A stretch of 64,000 nucleotides of DNA from the IMG/VR virus record IMGVR_UViG_3300044213_000107, positions 124,001 through 188,000 of that record. One strand, 5' to 3'. The first letter of the stretch is position 1. Each line of letters starts with the position of its first letter. A program made the translations under genes and the position numbers. Of this stretch, positions 4,124 through 46,242 are shown piece after piece. A model generated the notes under the pieces. It worked only from the letters and a program-made list of their open reading frames with translations, made no database searches and was not told the DNA's origin.

Positions 4124-6334
4124 TTATGTCAAGACTTGCCAGCCGATTTCGCCCAAAACATCGGCATTATTTGATGTTGATGTGATTACTAAGGTAAGTG
4201 TATCCGAAACGTTGGCCAGTGTGCGACCAAGTTGGTATTGGAATATACCTTGACTTTCGAGTGTAATGGCAGTTCTGGCATCGGCATAGCCCGCGGCAAC
4301 TTCGGTGCCGCCCGAGACTGCGGTAGCGGCCGAGTCTACATCTACTGCACCAGTAGCAGTAGTACCGGTCCAGGTAGCACCAGTTAAGGTAGCATTCAAT
4401 AATAACGCCCACCGATAGTAGTTTACTGAAGGACTCAGGATGTCTACCTGTGTAGGGTTAACCACAGAATCTAATCTACTGCTATTCATTCTAATGCTGA
4501 CCAAAGGTATATATGTTCCTGCTGATGTAACACGTTTGGTAGTAACACCAGTGCCGGCTGTTTCGGTATAGCCAATTTCGTTGTAGCCGGCTTCGCTCAT
4601 TACACTACAACAAATCTGTTTCATTGTACTGGCCTGTGCGGTTGCACCAGTATTGGTTATTTCATAGCGTATGGGCAGAGTTGCTGTCTGCATATAGGTT
4701 GTGGTATAGTTAGTGCTGTTAGCGTGATGAAACTTGTGGCAACACACATATTGTCCATTGATCACAAAACCTGTGCGTACTGTGCCCACACCTAACCACT
4801 CAATGTCGCACCAGAATATTTGTGGTGCGGCTGTGTTAAGTGTAATGCCGCTAGGACCTGTGCCGTCTAATCGGTCATAGTTCCACGAACTCTGTGCTAT
4901 TCTTTCTTCGGCTAATGTTCCAGAACTTGAACTGCGAATAACCATATTCAGTGTACTGTTGGCCTGTTCAAAGTAAATGCCATTTGAGGCACCAAAGTAG
5001 CCCACACGCTGACGTAGGTTGTTTTGTGCTGGTGCCATAACAAAGGTACACAGGATAAGTAAACTCTTACCTGGCTGATAGTTGAACACACGCTTGGATT
5101 CACGTATGACCTCTGATCCTGAACTTGTGGTAACATTAAGATTACGTACATCGGCGTTGAAGTCGTAGGTAACAGTTCCGCCGGTGCTGACAGCATTACT
5201 AAACTGTCCTCGGGAGATATAACGCAAGGCACTATCAAATATAGTAACTGGTTCACTAACACGTAGTCGACCAAAAGCATCATAGGCAGTTGGTGTAAAT
5301 GTTACTGTTGGTGTGCCATTAATCGATACATTTGCATTAGAAGGAAATGTTGTAGTAATATTACCTGCAACTTGCCAAGGTGTTGTGCCTTGATTTACTG
5401 TAATAGGTTGGTCTGACCCACCAATGTTGCCGTAGATGTGTACGTTGCCAGTAATAGTAGGTAGTTGTGTTATTGATACATTACTTGGAAAGTTATTAAC
5501 ATTTACATTACCAGCAATAGTAGGTAGTTGTGTAATTGATACATTACCTGATACTCCTACACTACCTGTAACAGGTGGCATCTGTGTTATCGATACATTA
5601 CCTAAGGCAGGTAACTGTGTTATGCTTACATTACCACTTACACTAACTCCAGGTAGTTGTGTTATTGATATGTTACCTGATACACCAACATTACCTGTAA
5701 CAGCAGGCATCTGTGTAATGCTAACATTACTTGGGAAATTATCTACATTAACATTACCACGAACAGCAGGTAACTGTGTTATGCTTACGTTGCCAAGTGC
5801 TGGTAATTGAGAAATTGAAACGTTACCACTCACACCAACATTGCCACTTACTCCAACGTTGCCTGTGATAGACGGCATTGTGGTTATCGATACATTACTT
5901 GGAAATACAGGAAAATTATTTACATTAACATTACCAGTTATTGTTGGTAGTTGTGTGATACTTATATTACCAGGAAAGTTAGTAACCGCAACACCTGGCA
6001 TTTGTGTAATGCTAACATTACTGGGAAATGCTGGAAAGTTAGTTACAGCGACATTGCCAGCGACACGAACATTGGCGTTACCATCTAAACTTACTGGTAA
6101 CCAAGGTACTGTTAGTATACCAGATGTACCAATTTCATCAAGATGAACGTGTACTGCATTATCTGGAGTTGAATCAACTTGAACTACACCAGGAATATTT
6201 ACATTGCCACTAATGTTAATGTTGCCAGCAAAGCCTGTGCGTACAGTTACATCACCACCGTCATTTAGATAAAGAGCGTTGGTTAAATTTTGTAGTAACG
6301 GATTTACACCTGGGCCTTTGTTGCTGGTGCTCAT
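4124..6334 (-). CDS. Repeat-rich putative virion structural protein
   Basis: About 11 (G/S)N(V/I)SITQ(L/M)P units followed by a beta-rich C-terminal domain starting DAFGRLRVSEP. Confidence 0.75.
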   Translation of the reverse strand: MSTSNKGPGVNPLLQNLTNALYLNDGGDVTVRTGFAGNINISGNVNIPGVVQVDSTPDNAVHVHLDEIGTSGILTVPWLPVSLDGNANVRVAGNVAVTNFPAFPSNVSITQMPGVAVTNFPGNISITQLPTITGNVNVNNFPVFPSNVSITTMPSITGNVGVSGNVGVSGNVSISQLPALGNVSITQLPAVRGNVNVDNFPSNVSITQMPAVTGNVGVSGNISITQLPGVSVSGNVSITQLPALGNVSITQMPPVTGSVGVSGNVSITQLPTIAGNVNVNNFPSNVSITQLPTITGNVHIYGNIGGSDQPITVNQGTTPWQVAGNITTTFPSNANVSINGTPTVTFTPTAYDAFGRLRVSEPVTIFDSALRYISRGQFSNAVSTGGTVTYDFNADVRNLNVTTSSGSEVIRESKRVFNYQPGKSLLILCTFVMAPAQNNLRQRVGYFGASNGIYFEQANSTLNMVIRSSSSGTLAEERIAQSSWNYDRLDGTGPSGITLNTAAPQIFWCDIEWLGVGTVRTGFVINGQYVCCHKFHHANSTNYTTTYMQTATLPIRYEITNTGATAQASTMKQICCSVMSEAGYNEIGYTETAGTGVTTKRVTSAGTYIPLVSIRMNSSRLDSVVNPTQVDILSPSVNYYRWALLLNATLTGATWTGTTATGAVDVDSAATAVSGGTEVAAGYADARTAITLESQGIFQYQLGRTLANVSDTLTLVITSTSNNADVLGEIGWQVLT
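5380..6070 (-). repeat. Degenerate tandem coding repeat (GNVSITQLP family)
   Basis: Recurrent tgtgttat(c/g)...acattac DNA units that match the peptide repeat. Confidence 0.85.
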
Positions 6335-42383: not shown

Positions 42384-43841
42384 TCATTGCCACTCGGCTT
42401 TTTCTACAGTAAACGGATATTCGGCTTCCGTATAAAATTTCTTGCGTGCAGTCAGATGTCTCTTCGCAAATTTGCAAGTACTTGTGATATCCCAGATTTG
42501 TACAAAGTCCTTGTCCTCCGCTTTCCTAATACCTCGCCCAATTGATTGTATAACCCTGACAAAGCTTTTTCCGGGCTCCACAAGAACCAAATTAAAAATC
42601 CTAGGGATATTAATACCCACAGCGGCCACACCATAAGTCGCCACAATAATCTTATCAGATGACACTGCCACTTCGTCATATTCTTCCTTTCGATCTTTTG
42701 CTTTAGTTGAACCACTTACAAATACTGCTCGATCACCCAGGCGTTCTACTAATAACTTTCCTGTAGCAATACGATCCACCAGAACAAGCGTGTTGCCAGT
42801 TTCATTTACACGGGTGATTAGATTACGCATATAATCTAGTCTGCCATCGGTTTCTAGTAGGTATTTTAATTCTGTTTGATAGTCTCGATATTCAACGTGA
42901 TCGACTAATTGTACTATATTTACATGGCAGTTAGCAAGATGGCCGGCATCCTGAAGATCACTAGCACTTAGTTTTCCCACTACCGGGCCAAGGCTACAAA
43001 ATATACTAACTCGAGCATATTCTTCTTTGGGAATAGTTCCTGTTAGTCCCCAACGTATTGGCACGTGGGCGAACACTCCGGTAAGCAAAACTTTTAATGC
43101 ATCTGCCTTGGCCATGTGCACTTCATCAACAATAACACAAACCACATCTTCAATAAAGTCCCCGATAGTAACATCTGCTTCGTAGTTCTTTGTATTTTTT
43201 AATAATACATTTAGGCTTTGCCAAGTACATATTGTATGAGTATGCCCAAACTCTTTACGGTCTCCGAAATAAACACCGGTGTCAAGACCTAGATTACGAT
43301 AGTCATCTTCAGTTTGTGTTACTAGACTTTTGTTTGGTACGATAACAATGCTACGCCCATATGTTTCTACGCTCCTACTCAGTGCTGCCGTCATAATTGT
43401 TTTACCTGCACCTGTGGCAACTTCCTGGAGGCTCTGGGGATTAGTAAAAAAGTTATTTAGAATAGGAACTTGGTAATCCCTGAGCCAAATAGGTTCCCCG
43501 GCTCGGGGGTGCCCTTTAGGCCAAGTACGGTCAGCAAACATATCTTCTGAGGCTTCAGGGAATTCAAATTTGGTAGAGTATTCACGTAGGTCCTCTACTT
43601 CAATGTCGTAGCCTTCGCTGTCTAGAAAAGTGAGAATGTCCGGGAGTAAGTTAATGTAGGTACTACCACCAAGTTGAAAGAACGCAACTTTACCATCCCA
43701 ACGTCCTAATCGCACACTTGGCTGATATCGCGCTCCAGGGATTTCGTACTTGAATTTGTCCACTAGTTTTTTTCTAGTTGACAATTCTAAGCCTTCTATC
43801 TTTACGTTTACTTCATCTCGTATAATTAGTTTTGCAGTCAT
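42384..43841 (-). CDS. uvsW: SF2 DNA helicase, UvsW-like
   Basis: LRDYQ, ATGAGKT, IVDEVH, GLTGT, ATYGVAAVGINIP, QSIGRGIR. Confidence 0.9.
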   Translation of the reverse strand: MTAKLIIRDEVNVKIEGLELSTRKKLVDKFKYEIPGARYQPSVRLGRWDGKVAFFQLGGSTYINLLPDILTFLDSEGYDIEVEDLREYSTKFEFPEASEDMFADRTWPKGHPRAGEPIWLRDYQVPILNNFFTNPQSLQEVATGAGKTIMTAALSRSVETYGRSIVIVPNKSLVTQTEDDYRNLGLDTGVYFGDRKEFGHTHTICTWQSLNVLLKNTKNYEADVTIGDFIEDVVCVIVDEVHMAKADALKVLLTGVFAHVPIRWGLTGTIPKEEYARVSIFCSLGPVVGKLSASDLQDAGHLANCHVNIVQLVDHVEYRDYQTELKYLLETDGRLDYMRNLITRVNETGNTLVLVDRIATGKLLVERLGDRAVFVSGSTKAKDRKEEYDEVAVSSDKIIVATYGVAAVGINIPRIFNLVLVEPGKSFVRVIQSIGRGIRKAEDKDFVQIWDITSTCKFAKRHLTARKKFYTEAEYPFTVEKAEWQ

Positions 43842-43847
43842 TGATTA

Positions 43848-45008
43848 TTATTTTTTCTTACTAGTATACACATCTTCTGCAAAGAATACAACCTTCTCGG
43901 CACGTTGGAGTAGCAGAGATTTTTCGCCGCCAAACATCATTCCTTGTGTGCTTACCAGCAACGGTATTGTATTTTCCATGTTTACATTATACTTATTCAT
44001 AAACACCAGCTTTTTTTCACCTTTTGGTAAAAATTCTACGACGTCTTTACCCATTCCTGCATCAATAATTTGATCCTGCGGCAACAACGACAATACTGTT
44101 TTCTTAAATGAATCTCTCAGGCTAGGATCATATACATAAATTGGCCAACGGTCAGTAAGGTCAGCATACTCTACGATTTCTTCTAACACAATATTTTCAA
44201 TTTTTGATTTTGTCTTTATATGTCTGTCTACTAGATATCCACTTAGAGATCTGCGTTCTGTTTCTATAGCGTTGTAGATTTCACTGCTAACTGTATAACC
44301 TAGCACACTTGAGTAATCCACTAAACGATATAGATTATCATGAGCAAATCCACCAAGATATTCGTTGATGTATTCGGTCATTGTCACAGGTGCATTTGTA
44401 ATCACACAACCTTGATCTGTTAACTGTAACTCAATTGCATACGGTTCTGCTTCTGCGGTCTGTACTAGTTTATACAAATCCAGAACTTCTTGATCTATAG
44501 TAAACCCATGTCTTTGTGCAATGTCAACAGCAATTATAAGTATAGGTTCTGTTAGGCCAGCAAGCCAGACCTTAAGATTACTGTTCCATTTTAGTGTTCC
44601 ATTTGCTATTTTAGCTGCTTCTTTAAGATCTGTGATTATTTGGTTATTGTAGGAAAATCGTAGATGTAAAAAATTATCTTTTAAGTACAGACTGCGAGTA
44701 CGATCTATTTCCCTGAGTGGCAATCTGTATATTGGACGATTAACAGGTTCAACATCTATGCCTTTTTTTGCCAATTGACGACTATATTTTAATAAAATCT
44801 TGCAGGTTAATTCAGCTTGTCGATCAGTTAGTGGTTGATTGGCTATGGTAGTTTGAGAAACCGTATCGACAAAATTAACATCGTACCTGGCTAGGTTAAC
44901 GATCGGTTCACTGGCAAACATCCATCCCGATTTAACATTGCCCGATACTACGTCCCTGAGTCCGGCTAATACTTCTAAATACTCTTCAACAGTACTAAAT
45001 TGTTTCAT
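43848..45008 (-). CDS. Hypothetical protein (leaderless)
   Basis: 386-aa ORF; TTGACT...TAATAT promoter immediately upstream and no SD. Confidence 0.75.
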   Translation of the reverse strand: MKQFSTVEEYLEVLAGLRDVVSGNVKSGWMFASEPIVNLARYDVNFVDTVSQTTIANQPLTDRQAELTCKILLKYSRQLAKKGIDVEPVNRPIYRLPLREIDRTRSLYLKDNFLHLRFSYNNQIITDLKEAAKIANGTLKWNSNLKVWLAGLTEPILIIAVDIAQRHGFTIDQEVLDLYKLVQTAEAEPYAIELQLTDQGCVITNAPVTMTEYINEYLGGFAHDNLYRLVDYSSVLGYTVSSEIYNAIETERRSLSGYLVDRHIKTKSKIENIVLEEIVEYADLTDRWPIYVYDPSLRDSFKKTVLSLLPQDQIIDAGMGKDVVEFLPKGEKKLVFMNKYNVNMENTIPLLVSTQGMMFGGEKSLLLQRAEKVVFFAEDVYTSKKK

Positions 45009-45042
45009 AGGTGTATATTAACACATTTGTTAAATGCAAGTC

Positions 45043-45068
45043 AAAAAAATCCCTGCCGAAGCAGGGAT
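45043..45068 (-). terminator. Intrinsic terminator with UUCG loop
   Basis: ATCCCTGC-TTCG-GCAGGGAT-TTTTTT. Confidence 0.9.
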
Positions 45069-45071
45069 AAA

Positions 45072-45112
45072 ATATCGCCCAAAGAAAGGAGCTAGAAAAA
45101 CACGGGCGATAT
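45072..45112 (-). ncRNA. Hairpin with an anti-Shine-Dalgarno loop; candidate 3'-UTR sRNA
   Basis: AUAUCGCCC-GUGUUUUUCUAGCUCCUUUCUUU-GGGCGAUAU. Confidence 0.45.
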
Positions 45113-45117
45113 AAAAA

Positions 45118-46149
45118 TTATACTTTCATACAGGTTGTTTGAGCCATTAGTTTCCATTTAATTGGAAAGCTCTTACGCAATTGTGCAACCTTGATTGCCA
45201 TGCGCAAACTCATTTCACGCAATTTATTTTGATTGACTTCCATAAACTCAATCACTTCATCTTGTGCAATCTGCTCTAGGTCCATGTCTGCAAACAATGC
45301 ACCGTCTTGCGCAATCTGCTTGATACGCAAAATCTTATCACGCATTGTATCCAATGTCAAATCAAGATAGTGACAACGGCTTTGTAACGCATCTAAATGA
45401 TCACGAAGTTTTTGACTCTTGAGTCCATCAAACTTGAGATTAGTGATAAAAATCACACTTCCTTTAAACTCAAAACTATCAGGGATGCCTTCTCTACGCA
45501 GGGTAGAGCTTTCTGACAACCAACTAATTTTGCGTTTCTTACCAGAGTCCAATGCACCTTTAAGCAAGTTAAGTGACACGTCATCTAATAAAATGCTATC
45601 ACAGTCGTCAAACACAACTACACAATTGGGATCCGAATACTTGTACAAAGTTTGATACAAACCAATCGGTGTAGCACTACCTTTAACAACTTCTGCACGT
45701 AAACGCTTGCCAGCAATTTGGTCAAACAAACATGCTTTCTCGATGATTTGCTCTACACCAAAACTCTTACCTACTCCAGGAGGACCCGACACAATCATAG
45801 CACGAATTTCGCCATTGGTTGCGGCTTTTGTCATTTCGTCTAGGATCTCAAAACGCTCACGGATACGTGCAATAACTTCTTCGTCGGTTTCAACAGGAGC
45901 AGCCGTATGTGTAGGAGCAACTGCGACTGACGCAGGTACATCGGCACCAGCGACAAACTCATAGTCTGCAGGACTAGAAACTTTAACACGAATCTGCTCA
46001 GGAAAGCCCGGAAAGATACCGCCATTCATAACAGTAACATATCCACCTTTGGCAGTAGATTTGTACTGCTCAACAAGTTGGAATACTAACCCGGAAACAT
46101 CTGTTGTGCGATATGCACCTGAAGTAATACGAATAAATGCGTTTGACAT
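45118..46149 (-). CDS. AAA-family ATPase
   Basis: SGPPGVGKS, VFDDCD, FITN, ALQSR; start reset to MSNAF (AGGAG RBS). Confidence 0.88.
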   Translation of the reverse strand: MSNAFIRITSGAYRTTDVSGLVFQLVEQYKSTAKGGYVTVMNGGIFPGFPEQIRVKVSSPADYEFVAGADVPASVAVAPTHTAAPVETDEEVIARIRERFEILDEMTKAATNGEIRAMIVSGPPGVGKSFGVEQIIEKACLFDQIAGKRLRAEVVKGSATPIGLYQTLYKYSDPNCVVVFDDCDSILLDDVSLNLLKGALDSGKKRKISWLSESSTLRREGIPDSFEFKGSVIFITNLKFDGLKSQKLRDHLDALQSRCHYLDLTLDTMRDKILRIKQIAQDGALFADMDLEQIAQDEVIEFMEVNQNKLREMSLRMAIKVAQLRKSFPIKWKLMAQTTCMKV

Positions 46150-46242
46150 TTCAGCTCCTGTTTTGTTTAATATGTGTATATTATAACATGATTTAAAAAC
46201 CCGAGCAAGCATCGGGTTTTTGAGTGTTGCATTTTTGCAACA
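46150..46242 (-). promoter_or_regulatory. Early regulatory cassette, copy A (palindrome, terminator, sigma70 promoter, leader)
   Basis: TGTTG-N8-CAACA 46225-46242; hairpin 46195-46221; TTGCTC-17-TATAAT. Confidence 0.85.

What the first reader, a model, noticed from the sequence alone, without database searches (positions are those of the whole stretch)
45043..45117. Candidate 3'-UTR sRNA exposing an anti-Shine-Dalgarno loop
Seen: between the ATPase stop and a UUCG terminator lies a 9-bp stem whose 23-nt loop contains CUAGCUCCUUUCUUU. This is complementary to RBSs in the window: AGGAGCU of the ATPase gene itself, AAAGGAGC (46911), AAGGAGC (10121) and GAAAGGAG (12794). It also resembles a 16S 3' end. 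Known: sRNAs such as CyaR repress targets through an anti-SD loop. Inference: a broad translational silencer of early or host SD-led mRNAs that spares leaderless ones, or an autoregulator.
Basis: partly seen in the sequence, partly recalled or inferred. Interest (0 to 1): 0.62.

Follow-up and report, generated by a model that had tools for sequence, protein, structure and literature searches.

The report
Phage mRNA tail masks own start
At the end of an ATPase operon in a freshwater jumbo phage sits a conserved RNA hairpin whose loop is the exact complement of that operon's own ribosome-binding site, so the finished message can probably fold back and shut off its own translation; a similar trick has been described only in a few bacterial genes.

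Summary
On the minus strand, a 9-10 bp hairpin (45112-45072) with a 23-nt loop holding UAGCUCCU lies between the ATPase stop and a UUCG terminator (45068-45043). It is strongly conserved. In 114 distinct related IMG/VR loci the loop core GCUCC is invariant, and U at -3 is in 108 of 114. The stems have 84 different arm sequences and compensatory changes in 8 of 9 pairs.

The loop is not a general anti-SD. Its conserved extension matches the unusual RBS of the ATPase gene itself (AGGAGCU(A), true start 46149). RBS and loop change together across clades:
- GGAGCUAG with CUAGCUCC
- GGAGCCA with UGGCUCC
- GGAGCCAACC with GGUUGGCUCC (30 of 30 concordant)

Loci that lost the element mostly lost the C after GGAG (7 of 21 keep it, against 116 of 118 with the element). 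The element always sits just before the operon's terminator, even when up to 4 kb of extra genes follow the ATPase. It has no promoter of its own and occurs once in the 260-kb record.

Best reading: a dedicated 3'-end anti-RBS element that represses ATPase translation, like the icaR 3'UTR in S. aureus. Whether it acts in cis or as a released sRNA is unresolved, because no RNA data exist. The "broad silencer" reading is not supported.

The parts
46191..46225 (-). Intrinsic terminator of the upstream unit (AAAAACCCGA-UGCUUGC-UCGGGUUUUU). It isolates the ATPase transcription unit at its 5' side. The spurious ATG 46212 lies inside it.
46180..46208 (-). Predicted sigma-70-type promoter of the ATPase operon: -35 TTGCTC (46208-46203), 17 nt, extended -10 TGtTATAAT (-10 hexamer 46185-46180). 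Expected start of transcription is near 46173.
   Evidence: Sequence. Relatives carry TTGACC-N17-TATAAT at the same place, with promoter scores of 9-12 out of 12 in 64 loci. Predicted, not mapped.
46149..46159 (-). Target: RBS of the ATPase gene, AGGAGCU (46159-46153) plus GAAA up to the A of the AUG. It is complementary to loop AGCUCCU and, with a one-base bulge, to UUUC.
   Evidence: duplex -14.2 kcal/mol, best site in the 1.1-kb mRNA; pair probability 0.89 in the full-length mRNA ensemble.
45118..46149 (-). AAA+ ATPase gene (343 aa), the first and here the only gene of the operon.
   Evidence: Pfam AAA PF00004 E 3.9e-6. PHROG 1250 E 5.9e-81, with weak matches to clamp loader and DnaC-like loader. 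Relatives in PA5oct-like, Vibrio and Acinetobacter phages.
45072..45112 (-). Conserved hairpin: 9-bp stem (10 with a G-U pair) and 23-nt loop.
   Evidence: Stem covariation in relatives.
45087..45094 (-). Loop core UAGCUCCU, the anti-RBS sequence.
   Evidence: Among 67 unique elements the core bases U, A, G, C, U, C, C, U are kept in 64, 62, 66, 67, 67, 67, 67 and 65. GCUCC is invariant in 114.
45043..45068 (-). Intrinsic terminator of the ATPase operon (8-bp GC-rich stem, UUCG loop, U7). It starts 3 nt after the hairpin.
   Evidence: It is present after the element in all related loci used.
45015..45044 (-). Promoter of the next gene: -35 TTGACT, formed in part by the terminator's U-run (45044-45039), 18 nt, -10 TAATAT (45020-45015). 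It lies 6 nt before the ATG, so the mRNA should be leaderless.
   Evidence: Across relatives, 0 of 64 have an SD and the -10 ends 6 nt before the ATG in 45 of 62.
43848..45008 (-). Gene B (386 aa, hypothetical viral protein), leaderless. It is the neighbour of the element in most clades but not part of it.
   Evidence: no family. Absent downstream of the element in the GGUUGGCUCC clade, and separated from it by about 650 nt in L079 and L080.

Best explanation
This is a dedicated anti-RBS element at the 3' end of the ATPase operon's mRNA. Transcription starts at the promoter near 46180-46208, runs through the AAA+ ATPase gene (plus up to about 4 kb of extra small genes in relatives) and ends at the terminator at 45068-45043. 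The last thing transcribed before the terminator is a hairpin whose loop (UAGCUCCU) is complementary to the ribosome-binding site of the operon's first gene (AGGAGCU(A), up to the AUG). Loop and RBS pair over 7-11 bp and occlude the SD. This lowers initiation on the ATPase gene and probably exposes the mRNA to decay. Because the element is made last, a transcript should be translatable while nascent and closed once complete. That would act as a dose limiter or timer for a replication-type ATPase. Shown here: the structure, its conservation, the complementarity and its co-variation, its position at the transcript end, and its uniqueness. Inferred: that the pairing forms in vivo, that it represses, and that it acts in cis. 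The same pairing by a released 3' fragment in trans is equally compatible with the sequence data.
For: 1. Structure. Fold z = -4.0. Among 114 distinct elements there are 84 different 5' arms, all with stems of 6-14 bp. Stems of 7 bp or more occur in 97% of elements against 25% of control CTCC sites. In 19 aligned sequences, 8 of 9 pairs have compensatory changes, with 97.6% of cells paired against 24-44% when the partner is slid.
2. Loop. GCUCC is invariant in 114 of 114, and U at -3 is in 108 of 114.
3. Partner. The ATPase RBS has C after GGAG in 116 of 118 unique loci with the element and in 7 of 21 without it. In the first set the counts were 65 of 67 against 3 of 16, Fisher P = 1e-10, uncorrected for ancestry. 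GGAGCU is found in 44 of 67 ATPase RBSs, against 3 of 93 GGAG-RBSs of this genome and 3 of 53 in a control gene family.
4. Co-variation. All 30 loops with G at -2 have RBS C at +5. Loops with A at -2 have U 59, C 14, A 3, G 2. One clade pairs GGAGCCAACC(AUG) with GGUUGGCUCC, 10-11 bp perfect. At RBS +7 against loop -4, 64 of 78 are concordant, with A-U, G-C and U-A types. In L044 the match is 13 bp with one bulge.
5. Register. Anchored flank pairing is 74.3%, against 65.9 +/- 1.1 when loops are permuted among loci (0 of 1000 reach the observed value) and 20-46% in slid registers.
6. Specificity within the transcript. The ATPase RBS is the best duplex site for the loop in the whole operon mRNA in 42 of 54 loci. 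In full-length mRNA ensembles the RBS:loop pairs have probability 0.6-1.0 in 11 of 14 loci, and 0.89 in the window.
7. Position. The element always sits directly before the operon's terminator: within 60 nt of the ATPase stop in 48 loci, more than 500 nt downstream in 36, and up to 3979 nt away. There is mostly no terminator in between and no promoter of its own.
8. Established knowledge. 3'UTR-SD pairing blocks initiation and creates an RNase III substrate in icaR (PMC3868564). aSD-like 8-mers hundreds of nt downstream pair with the RBS, inhibit initiation and promote decay, and are otherwise depleted from genes (PMC12697547).
Against: There is no RNA evidence at all: no RNA run holds this phage. 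Phylogenetically independent contrasts are few and no single test reaches significance. For element against RBS C, 2.7 go the same way and 0 the opposite way, of 4 contrasts. For RBS +7 against loop -4, 5.0 go the same way and 0.4 the opposite way, of 9 (median p 0.125). For loop -2 against RBS +5, 1.8 and 0, of 2. The permutation tests ignore shared ancestry. The loop's UAG is more conserved than its proposed partner CUA (RBS +5 is U in 61 and C in 48 of 118; 14 loci have a C.A mismatch). The loop may therefore have a further constraint, such as a protein or a second target. L193 keeps GGAGCUAG without an element. L069 has a strong terminator and promoter between the ATPase and the element, so pairing there would have to be in trans or depend on read-through. 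Genome-wide, about 25 other sites give equal or better predicted duplex energy with the whole 23-nt loop. Nested-fold probabilities pit the loop pairing against the hairpin itself, so they do not model a loop-to-RBS kissing contact.
Confidence: 0.6

Rival explanations
1. The element is a 3'UTR-derived small RNA acting in trans as a broad anti-SD silencer. The hairpin plus terminator (about 70 nt) accumulates after processing or decay. Its CUCCU loop titrates SD sequences of many phage or host mRNAs, while leaderless genes such as the neighbouring gene B escape.
For: CUCCU is invariant and sits in a loop. A hairpin, AU-rich linker and terminator with U-tail is the usual build of stable, chaperone-bound 3' sRNAs (established knowledge of 3'UTR sRNAs such as CpxQ and SroC, from memory). 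In most clades the element is followed directly by a conserved leaderless gene (0 of 64 with an SD). In L069 the element and the ATPase RBS are on different predicted transcripts. The loop is more conserved than the ATPase RBS extension.
Against: The conserved loop bases outside the SD complement (U-A/G-G) match the ATPase RBS and co-vary with it. A general anti-SD would not need them. Other GGAG-led genes pair over a mean of 5.9 nt against 8.5. The only other 8-nt match in the genome (holin-like gene, genome 40925) is not conserved in relatives. About 14 candidate leaderless genes are scattered over the genome without such an element nearby. In the GGUUGGCUCC clade no leaderless gene B follows.
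Confidence: 0.08
2. The same specific pairing with the ATPase RBS occurs in trans only. A stable 3' fragment released from decaying operon mRNA feeds back on new ATPase transcripts, giving delayed negative feedback rather than intramolecular fold-back.
For: All the pairing evidence of the main explanation applies equally. The L069 architecture (terminator and promoter between the ATPase and the element) and the distances of up to 4 kb are easier to reconcile with trans action. The terminator with U-tail suits a stable fragment.
Against: Nothing in the sequence requires release of a fragment. There is no conserved processing signal or promoter before the hairpin. Strict placement at the end of the same operon in 114 loci is what a cis element needs, whereas a trans-acting gene could sit anywhere. 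The precedents icaR and the aSD-like 8-mers act within one molecule (PMC3868564, PMC12697547).
Confidence: 0.2
3. The hairpin is a protein-binding, processing or 3'-end-stabilising signal whose loop is read by a phage or host protein. Its likeness to the complement of the ATPase RBS is incidental.
For: The loop core is more conserved than the RBS partner. A hairpin right before a terminator can protect against 3' exonucleases. The neighbouring gene B has no known function.
Against: This does not explain why the ATPase RBS carries a non-canonical extension that changes with the loop (GGAGCUAG, GGAGCCA, GGAGCCAACC). It also does not explain why that extension decays when the element is lost. A protein site would keep one sequence, yet three loop classes exist, each matched by its RBS.
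Confidence: 0.07
4. The element belongs to the downstream leaderless gene B. It would act as an insulator or upstream signal for B's promoter, or at the DNA level, rather than for the ATPase operon.
For: In 67 of 73 loci where B is found, the CTCC lies 60-150 nt before B's ATG whatever the distance to the ATPase. The terminator's U-run forms part of B's -35.
Against: The GGUUGGCUCC clade (30 unique loci) keeps the hairpin and terminator after the ATPase operon with no B homologue or B-type promoter behind it. In L079 and L080 a 193-aa ORF separates the element from B. Covarying stems with unrelated sequences argue for RNA structure, not a duplex-DNA site. B has no SD to pair with.
Confidence: 0.05

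Closest known systems
icaR mRNA 3'UTR anti-SD motif (UCCCCUG) of Staphylococcus aureus (Ruiz de los Mozos et al. 2013, PMC3868564)
   Same: A pyrimidine-rich motif in the 3'UTR is complementary to the SD region of the same mRNA. The pairing interferes with the initiation complex and gives an RNase III substrate. The regulation is dedicated to one gene.
   Different: There is no sequence or structural homology. Here the motif (UAGCUCCU) sits in the loop of a covarying hairpin 3 nt before the terminator, in a 109-nt intergenic region rather than in a 3'UTR longer than 100 nt. It works across whole operons of 1.1-4.4 kb, in dsDNA jumbo phages. The function here is inferred from comparative data only.
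Long-range aSD-like sequences that pair with the RBS in Bacillus subtilis (Gill et al. 2025 preprint, PMC12697547); hbs 5'/3'-UTR interaction (PMC5737220)
   Same: An aSD-like sequence far downstream pairs with the RBS within one mRNA, blocks initiation and promotes decay.
   Different: Those sequences are synthetic substitutions, and natural genes are depleted of them. Here such a sequence is positively conserved, extended beyond the SD complement, and displayed in a dedicated hairpin. The hbs interaction stabilises the mRNA rather than repressing it.
hok mRNA fold-back inhibition (fbi) element of plasmid R1 (recalled from memory, not checked here)
   Same: The 3' end of a full-length mRNA pairs with its 5' end and keeps it translationally inert. 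Nascent and complete transcripts differ in activity.
   Different: hok pairing is between the terminal sequences, not a loop and an SD. It is relieved by 3' processing and belongs to a toxin-antitoxin system. None of these features was seen here.
SD-targeting loops of trans sRNAs (CyaR, RF00112; C-rich loops of S. aureus RNAIII and RsaE, PMC6158497)
   Same: A CU-rich loop pairs with SD regions to block initiation, and a Rho-independent terminator follows.
   Different: Those are independently transcribed genes with several targets. This element has no promoter, one supported target, and no Rfam match.

Membership tests
3'UTR-to-own-SD pairing elements (icaR type; a functional class, not a homology family) | The motif lies downstream of the coding region on the same transcript as the target SD | tested here: met
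   The element lies between the last stop and the operon terminator in 114 loci. There is no promoter before it and mostly no terminator between the ATPase and the element. Transcript ends are predicted, not mapped.
3'UTR-to-own-SD pairing elements (icaR type) | Complementarity to the SD region of its own mRNA, beyond what any SD would give | tested here: met
   7-11 bp including the non-canonical bases after GGAG. Co-variation across three RBS/loop classes. The ATPase RBS is the best site in the operon mRNA in 42 of 54 loci.
3'UTR-to-own-SD pairing elements (icaR type) | The pairing lowers translation initiation and/or triggers RNase cleavage | not testable with these tools
   This needs reporters, toeprinting or RNase assays. 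No RNA runs exist for this phage.
3'UTR-to-own-SD pairing elements (icaR type) | Sequence homology to the icaR 3'UTR (UCCCCUG motif) | tested here: not met
   The loop core is UAGCUCCU or UGGCUCC. There is no Rfam or other similarity. The likeness is one of mechanism only.
3'UTR-derived trans-acting sRNA | A stable short RNA species accumulates | not testable with these tools
   There is no RNA run. The contigs laid are DNA.
3'UTR-derived trans-acting sRNA | Conserved targets on other transcripts | tested here: not met
   The only other 8-nt RBS match in the genome (holin-like gene) is not conserved: GGAGCU in 3 of 53 relatives. Other GGAG-RBSs pair over a mean of 5.9 nt. Only the phage's own genes were tested; host targets are unknown.
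Any curated RNA family (Rfam 15, including CyaR, RyhB, MicA) | Score at or above the family's gathering threshold | tested here: not met
   There were 0 matches in the window and in 8 related loci. The best sub-threshold hits were 16-22 bits against thresholds of 41-100.
Intrinsic (Rho-independent) terminator | GC-rich stem directly followed by a U-run | tested here: met
   This is met only by the second hairpin, 45068-45043. The first, loop-bearing hairpin is followed by UUUUAUCC and is not a terminator by itself.

The most novel reading that the evidence does not exclude
The hairpin plus terminator is released as a stable phage sRNA whose invariant CUCCU loop mimics the 16S anti-SD. Besides shutting its own ATPase mRNA, it would globally damp SD-dependent initiation late in infection and shift ribosomes to the phage's leaderless genes, such as the conserved leaderless gene placed right behind it. 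This would be a virus-encoded switch between two modes of translation initiation.
Probability: 0.07. Interest if true: 0.85.

Novelty: new member of a known kind. Interest (0 to 1): 0.62.

Why it matters
Regulation of a bacterial-type mRNA by pairing of its 3' end with its own ribosome-binding site has few worked examples. The icaR paper calls its case a 'singular example'. A 2025 study shows that such sequences are potent and normally selected against. Here is a natural element in which the sequence is positively conserved. It spans more than a hundred distinct uncultivated jumbo-phage lineages, carries three co-varying RBS/loop 'key and lock' versions, and works over 1-4.4 kb. This gives comparative support for a long-range 5'-3' contact in a dsDNA phage mRNA. 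It also defines an RNA motif absent from Rfam and offers a compact part (about 40 nt plus an 8-11 nt RBS tag) that could be tested as a translation limiter that can be matched to its own RBS tag. It also suggests that the dose or timing of this AAA+ replication-type ATPase matters to these phages.

Tried and rejected
- Rfam at gathering and at permissive thresholds: nothing.
- Megablast of the region against GenBank phages: no near relative.
- The cultured distant relatives PA5oct and Vibrio phage VAP7 have the ATPase but neither the GGAGCU RBS nor the element, so their RNA-seq cannot help.
- Sequencing runs: 12 freshwater DNA holders and no RNA. Contigs from four other samples show 6 differences in 45003-45037 and none listed in 45038-45182. 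That is weak support for constraint and says nothing about expression.
- A separate sRNA gene was rejected. Promoter scores before the hairpin are 0-9 of 12, against 8-11 before gene B and 9-12 before the ATPase. The TATAAT overlapping the window's stop codon is not conserved.
- A repeated terminator-associated motif was rejected. TAGCTCC in a hairpin occurs once in 260 kb.
- A second conserved target (holin-like gene, genome 40925) was rejected.
- A genome-wide duplex scan with the whole loop is unspecific. The ATPase RBS ranks about 25th, so target prediction in a single genome would not have found the partner.
- A DNA-level site or inverted repeats flanking the ATPase were considered and set aside, because the stems covary with unrelated sequences.
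- RNAalifold on the UUUUG(U/A)UAGCUCCUUUU class failed because MAFFT put the arms out of register. Stems for that class were counted by script instead.
- Independent-contrast tests are underpowered even with 139 rows.
- Gene B has no Pfam or PHROG match, and the Atlas gives only 'hypothetical viral protein'. No solved-structure relative of the ATPase was found by sequence.
- The large protein searches, structure prediction and complex prediction were not used, because the question did not rest on them.

Full report
**What is there**

The window is bases 124001-188000 of a 260,723-bp IMG/VR virus record, estimated 74% complete and 38.5% G+C. It is a freshwater jumbo phage. Its closest cultured relatives at this locus are PA5oct-like Pseudomonas phages, at only about 40% protein identity.

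Genes around the finding run on the minus strand. Reading that strand:
- The AAA+ ATPase gene ends with TAA at 45120-45118.
- A hairpin follows: arms AUAUCGCCC and GGGCGAUAU (45112-45104 and 45080-45072), with the 23-nt loop GUGUUUUUCUAGCUCCUUUCUUU.
- After UUUA comes a canonical terminator, AUCCCUGC-UUCG-GCAGGGAU plus U7 (45068-45043).
- The last U's of the terminator form the -35 (TTGACT) of a promoter whose -10 (TAATAT, 45020-45015) ends 6 nt before the ATG of the next gene, B (45008). That mRNA should therefore be leaderless.

The two hairpins are the MFE and the centroid, with z = -4.0 against shuffles. The ATPase does not start at the ORF lister's ATG 46212, which lies inside the upstream terminator. 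It starts at ATG 46149, preceded by ACAGGAGCUGAA.

**Conservation**

Seven scans of IMG/VR with ATPase proteins from different clades gave 401 loci. After removing duplicates, 139 distinct combinations of ATPase RBS and downstream element remained. Of these, 118 carry the element, 114 of them as a hairpin.

In the 114 hairpins GCUCC is invariant and U at -3 is present in 108. The base at -2 is A in 78 and G in 30. The stems are unrelated in sequence, with 84 different 5' arms, but always pair over 6-14 bp.

The same stem-search procedure found stems of 7 bp or more at 25% of 1018 control CTCC sites, against 97% of elements. In a register-consistent subset of 19 sequences, 8 of 9 stem pairs show changes on both sides. 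There, 97.6% of cells pair, against 24-44% when the partner is slid and 81.7% when shuffled.

The element has no Rfam family. It occurs once in the 260-kb record. PA5oct and VAP7 lack it.

**Where it sits**

The element is always followed within a few bases by an intrinsic terminator. Relative to the ATPase stop it lies within 60 nt in 48 loci, at 61-500 nt in 30 loci and more than 500 nt away (up to 3979 nt) in 36 loci. The space between is filled with small SD-led ORFs.

In 11 of the 13 such loci examined, no terminator is predicted between the ATPase and the element. The ATPase is the first gene behind a strong TTGACC-N17-TATAAT promoter. The element has no promoter of its own: scores are 0-9 of 12, against 8-11 for gene B and 9-12 for the ATPase. 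It therefore marks the 3' end of the operon that begins with the ATPase.

In most clades the next gene is the leaderless gene B, with the CTCC 60-150 nt before its ATG in 67 of 73 loci. However, in a clade of 30 unique loci the hairpin and terminator are kept with no B homologue or B-type promoter behind them. In L079 and L080 another ORF separates the element from B. The element goes with the ATPase operon, not with B.

**The partner**

The loop's conserved bases extend beyond an SD complement, so I asked what carries GGAGCUA. The ATPase RBS does. In unique loci with the element, the base after GGAG is C in 116 of 118, and the next is U in 61 or C in 48.

This is not the phage's general RBS:
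- In this genome only 3 of 93 GGAG-led ORFs read GGAGCU.
- AGGAGCU occurs three times on the whole minus strand.
- In a control gene family of the same phage group (holin-like) it occurs in 3 of 53.

Anchoring RBS GGAG on loop CUCC, positions -1 to +4 pair in 96-100% of the first 64 loci. Positions +5 to +8 pair in 70-77%, and pairing then falls to a background of about 42%. Slid registers give 30-47%. In the larger set the flank positions pair in 74.3%. That compares with 65.9 +/- 1.1 when loops are dealt to other loci (0 of 1000 permutations reach the observed value) and 20-46% in slid registers. Other GGAG-led genes of the same loci give a mean contiguous duplex of 5.9 nt, against 8.5 for the ATPase RBS.

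**Co-variation**

Three key-and-lock versions exist:
- RBS AGGAGCUA(G/A) with loop (C/U)UAGCUCCU. At RBS +7 against loop -4, 64 of 78 are concordant, with A-U, G-C, U-A and G-U types. The sister loci L033 and L062 differ and both match their own partner.
- RBS GGAGCCA with loop UGGCUCC (L002, L016, L027, L035).
- RBS GGAGCCAACC-AUG with loop GGUUGGCUCC, 10-11 bp perfect (for example L195).

All 30 loops with G at -2 have C at RBS +5. Loops with A at -2 have U 59, C 14, A 3, G 2. L044 reaches 13 bp with one bulge.

Where the element is absent upstream of B (21 unique loci, at least 4-8 changes on the tree), the RBS reads GGAGU, GGAGA or GGAA in 14 loci. C is kept in only 7. L193, which has no element but still reads GGAGCUAG, sits beside L095 and L190 (GGAAGC). 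This fits decay of the RBS extension after loss of the element.

**Limits of the statistics**

Phylogenetically independent contrasts are few:
- Element against RBS C: 2.7 go the same way and 0 the opposite way, of 4.
- RBS +7 against loop -4: 5.0 the same way and 0.4 the opposite way, of 9, with median p 0.125.
- Loop -2 against RBS +5: 1.8 the same way and 0 the opposite way, of 2.

The direction is consistent, but no single test reaches 0.05. The permutation and Fisher tests ignore ancestry.

**Thermodynamics**

Within each operon mRNA (1.1-4.4 kb) the ATPase RBS is the best duplex site for the loop in 42 of 54 loci. In the window it gives -14.2 kcal/mol, with the next site at -11.3.

In partition functions of full-length mRNAs the RBS:loop pairs have probability 0.6-1.0 in 11 of 14 loci, and 0.89 in the window. 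In the window the MFE pairs CAAA..AGGAGCU.GAAA with UUUC.AGCUCCU..UUUG. These nested models make the contact compete with the hairpin, so they show the strength of the complementarity, not the geometry. Genome-wide, the whole 23-nt loop has about 25 equal or better sites. The partner is therefore identified by comparative evidence, not by energy.

**Mechanism**

I take the element to be a dedicated anti-RBS at the 3' end of the ATPase operon. The shown steps are the structure, the conservation, the complementarity with co-variation, the position at the transcript's end, and the uniqueness.

The inferred steps rest on established cases. In icaR, 3'UTR-SD pairing blocks the initiation complex and gives an RNase III substrate (PMC3868564). 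In B. subtilis, aSD-like 8-mers several hundred nucleotides downstream pair with the RBS, inhibit initiation and promote decay, and are depleted from natural genes (PMC12697547). A positively conserved aSD-like sequence is therefore expected to repress.

Because the element is transcribed last, nascent transcripts would be open and finished ones closed. This timer idea is my inference.

Cis or trans cannot be decided from sequence. Strict placement on the same operon favours cis. L069, with a terminator and promoter between the ATPase and the element, and the sRNA-like build (hairpin, AU-rich linker, terminator with U-tail) leave trans open.

One unexplained point remains. The loop's UAG is more conserved than the RBS's CUA, so the loop may have a further constraint.

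**Rivals**

- A broad anti-SD silencer is disfavoured by the specificity data above.
- A pure protein or processing site does not explain the matched RBS classes.
- A B-linked or DNA-level role is contradicted by the clade without B and by the covarying stems.

**Context**

The ATPase is an AAA+ protein (Pfam AAA; PHROG 1250, with weak clamp-loader and DnaC-like matches). It lies next to a UvsW-type helicase (42384-43841) and methyltransferases. Dose control of a loader-type ATPase is plausible but speculative.

**Comparison and novelty**

In mechanism the element is closest to the icaR 3'UTR. It is not homologous to it or to any Rfam family. It is a new, well-conserved member of the small class of 3'-end-to-own-RBS regulators, and I did not find one reported for dsDNA phages.

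Read laying was given 1301 bases.

Noticed in passing
window 45006-45044 (minus strand) and the same place in 64 related loci: Gene B (43848-45008) is a conserved leaderless gene. None of 64 relatives has an SD, and the -10 hexamer ends 6 nt before the ATG in 45 of 62. Its -35 TTGACT is built from the last U's of the preceding terminator. B has no recognisable family.
   Followed up: partly
whole record; in the window ATGs at 708, 11018, 31923, 45008, 59478 (all minus strand): About 14 ORFs of 60 aa or more have a TTGnnn-N16-19-TAnnnT promoter ending 4-8 nt before the ATG. They are candidate leaderless genes. Only 93 of 523 crude ORFs have GGAG upstream. Leaderless initiation seems to be a regular feature of this phage.
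   Followed up: no
L019 from 5053, L034 from 5047, L061 about 5060-5130, L063 from 5035, L075 from 5050, L210 about 5510-5580, L250 about 5990-6060 (not in the window): A second conserved non-coding motif of about 60 nt lies just after the ATPase stop, ahead of an inserted small SD-led ORF. Its sequence is CCCC(U)GCCGUGUGCGUAA(C/G)(A/G)GGCAAUG(U/C)CAAUAAGUCC(C/U)GUUUCGAUAA..GGAG. It looks like a structured leader, possibly a pseudoknot. No Rfam family matches it.
   Followed up: partly
between the ATPase stop and the element in related loci (for example L002, L017, L043, L055, L061, L069): The short gap between the ATPase stop and the hairpin is a hot spot for gene insertion. It holds 0 to about 4 kb of small ORFs that differ from lineage to lineage. 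The hairpin, terminator and downstream promoter stay intact.
   Followed up: partly
window 46149-46212 (minus strand): The longest-ORF start of the ATPase (ATG 46212) lies inside the upstream terminator hairpin and adds 21 spurious residues. An automatic annotation would probably miscall the start and so hide the 5'UTR and RBS.
   Followed up: yes
L045, L047, L051, L059 (about 5078-5130); L034 and L075 (about 8470 and 8040): Variant builds of the element exist. In the L045 group the motif (G)UUAGCUCCAG is single-stranded, directly after the stop codon and 5' of a different hairpin. In L034 and L075 a degenerate AUCGCUCCUG precedes a hairpin.
   Followed up: partly
window 45088-45094 (loop) with 46153-46159 (RBS): From memory and untested: UAGCUCC is the 3' strand, and GGGGCUA (here GGAGCUA) the 5' strand, of the acceptor stem of E. 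coli tRNA-Ala. The predicted RBS:loop helix would resemble that stem, with A-U in place of G3.U70. This is probably a coincidence. No tRNA lies in the window, and none of the other TAGCTCC sites in the record looks like a tRNA end.
   Followed up: no
genome 40203-40925 (minus strand; L261 207-926), outside the window: A holin-like gene (PF11351 GTA_holin_3TM, E 4e-6) has the RBS UUAGGAGCUAUAAUG. This is a perfect 8-nt match to the loop in this genome, but it is not conserved in relatives.
   Followed up: yes
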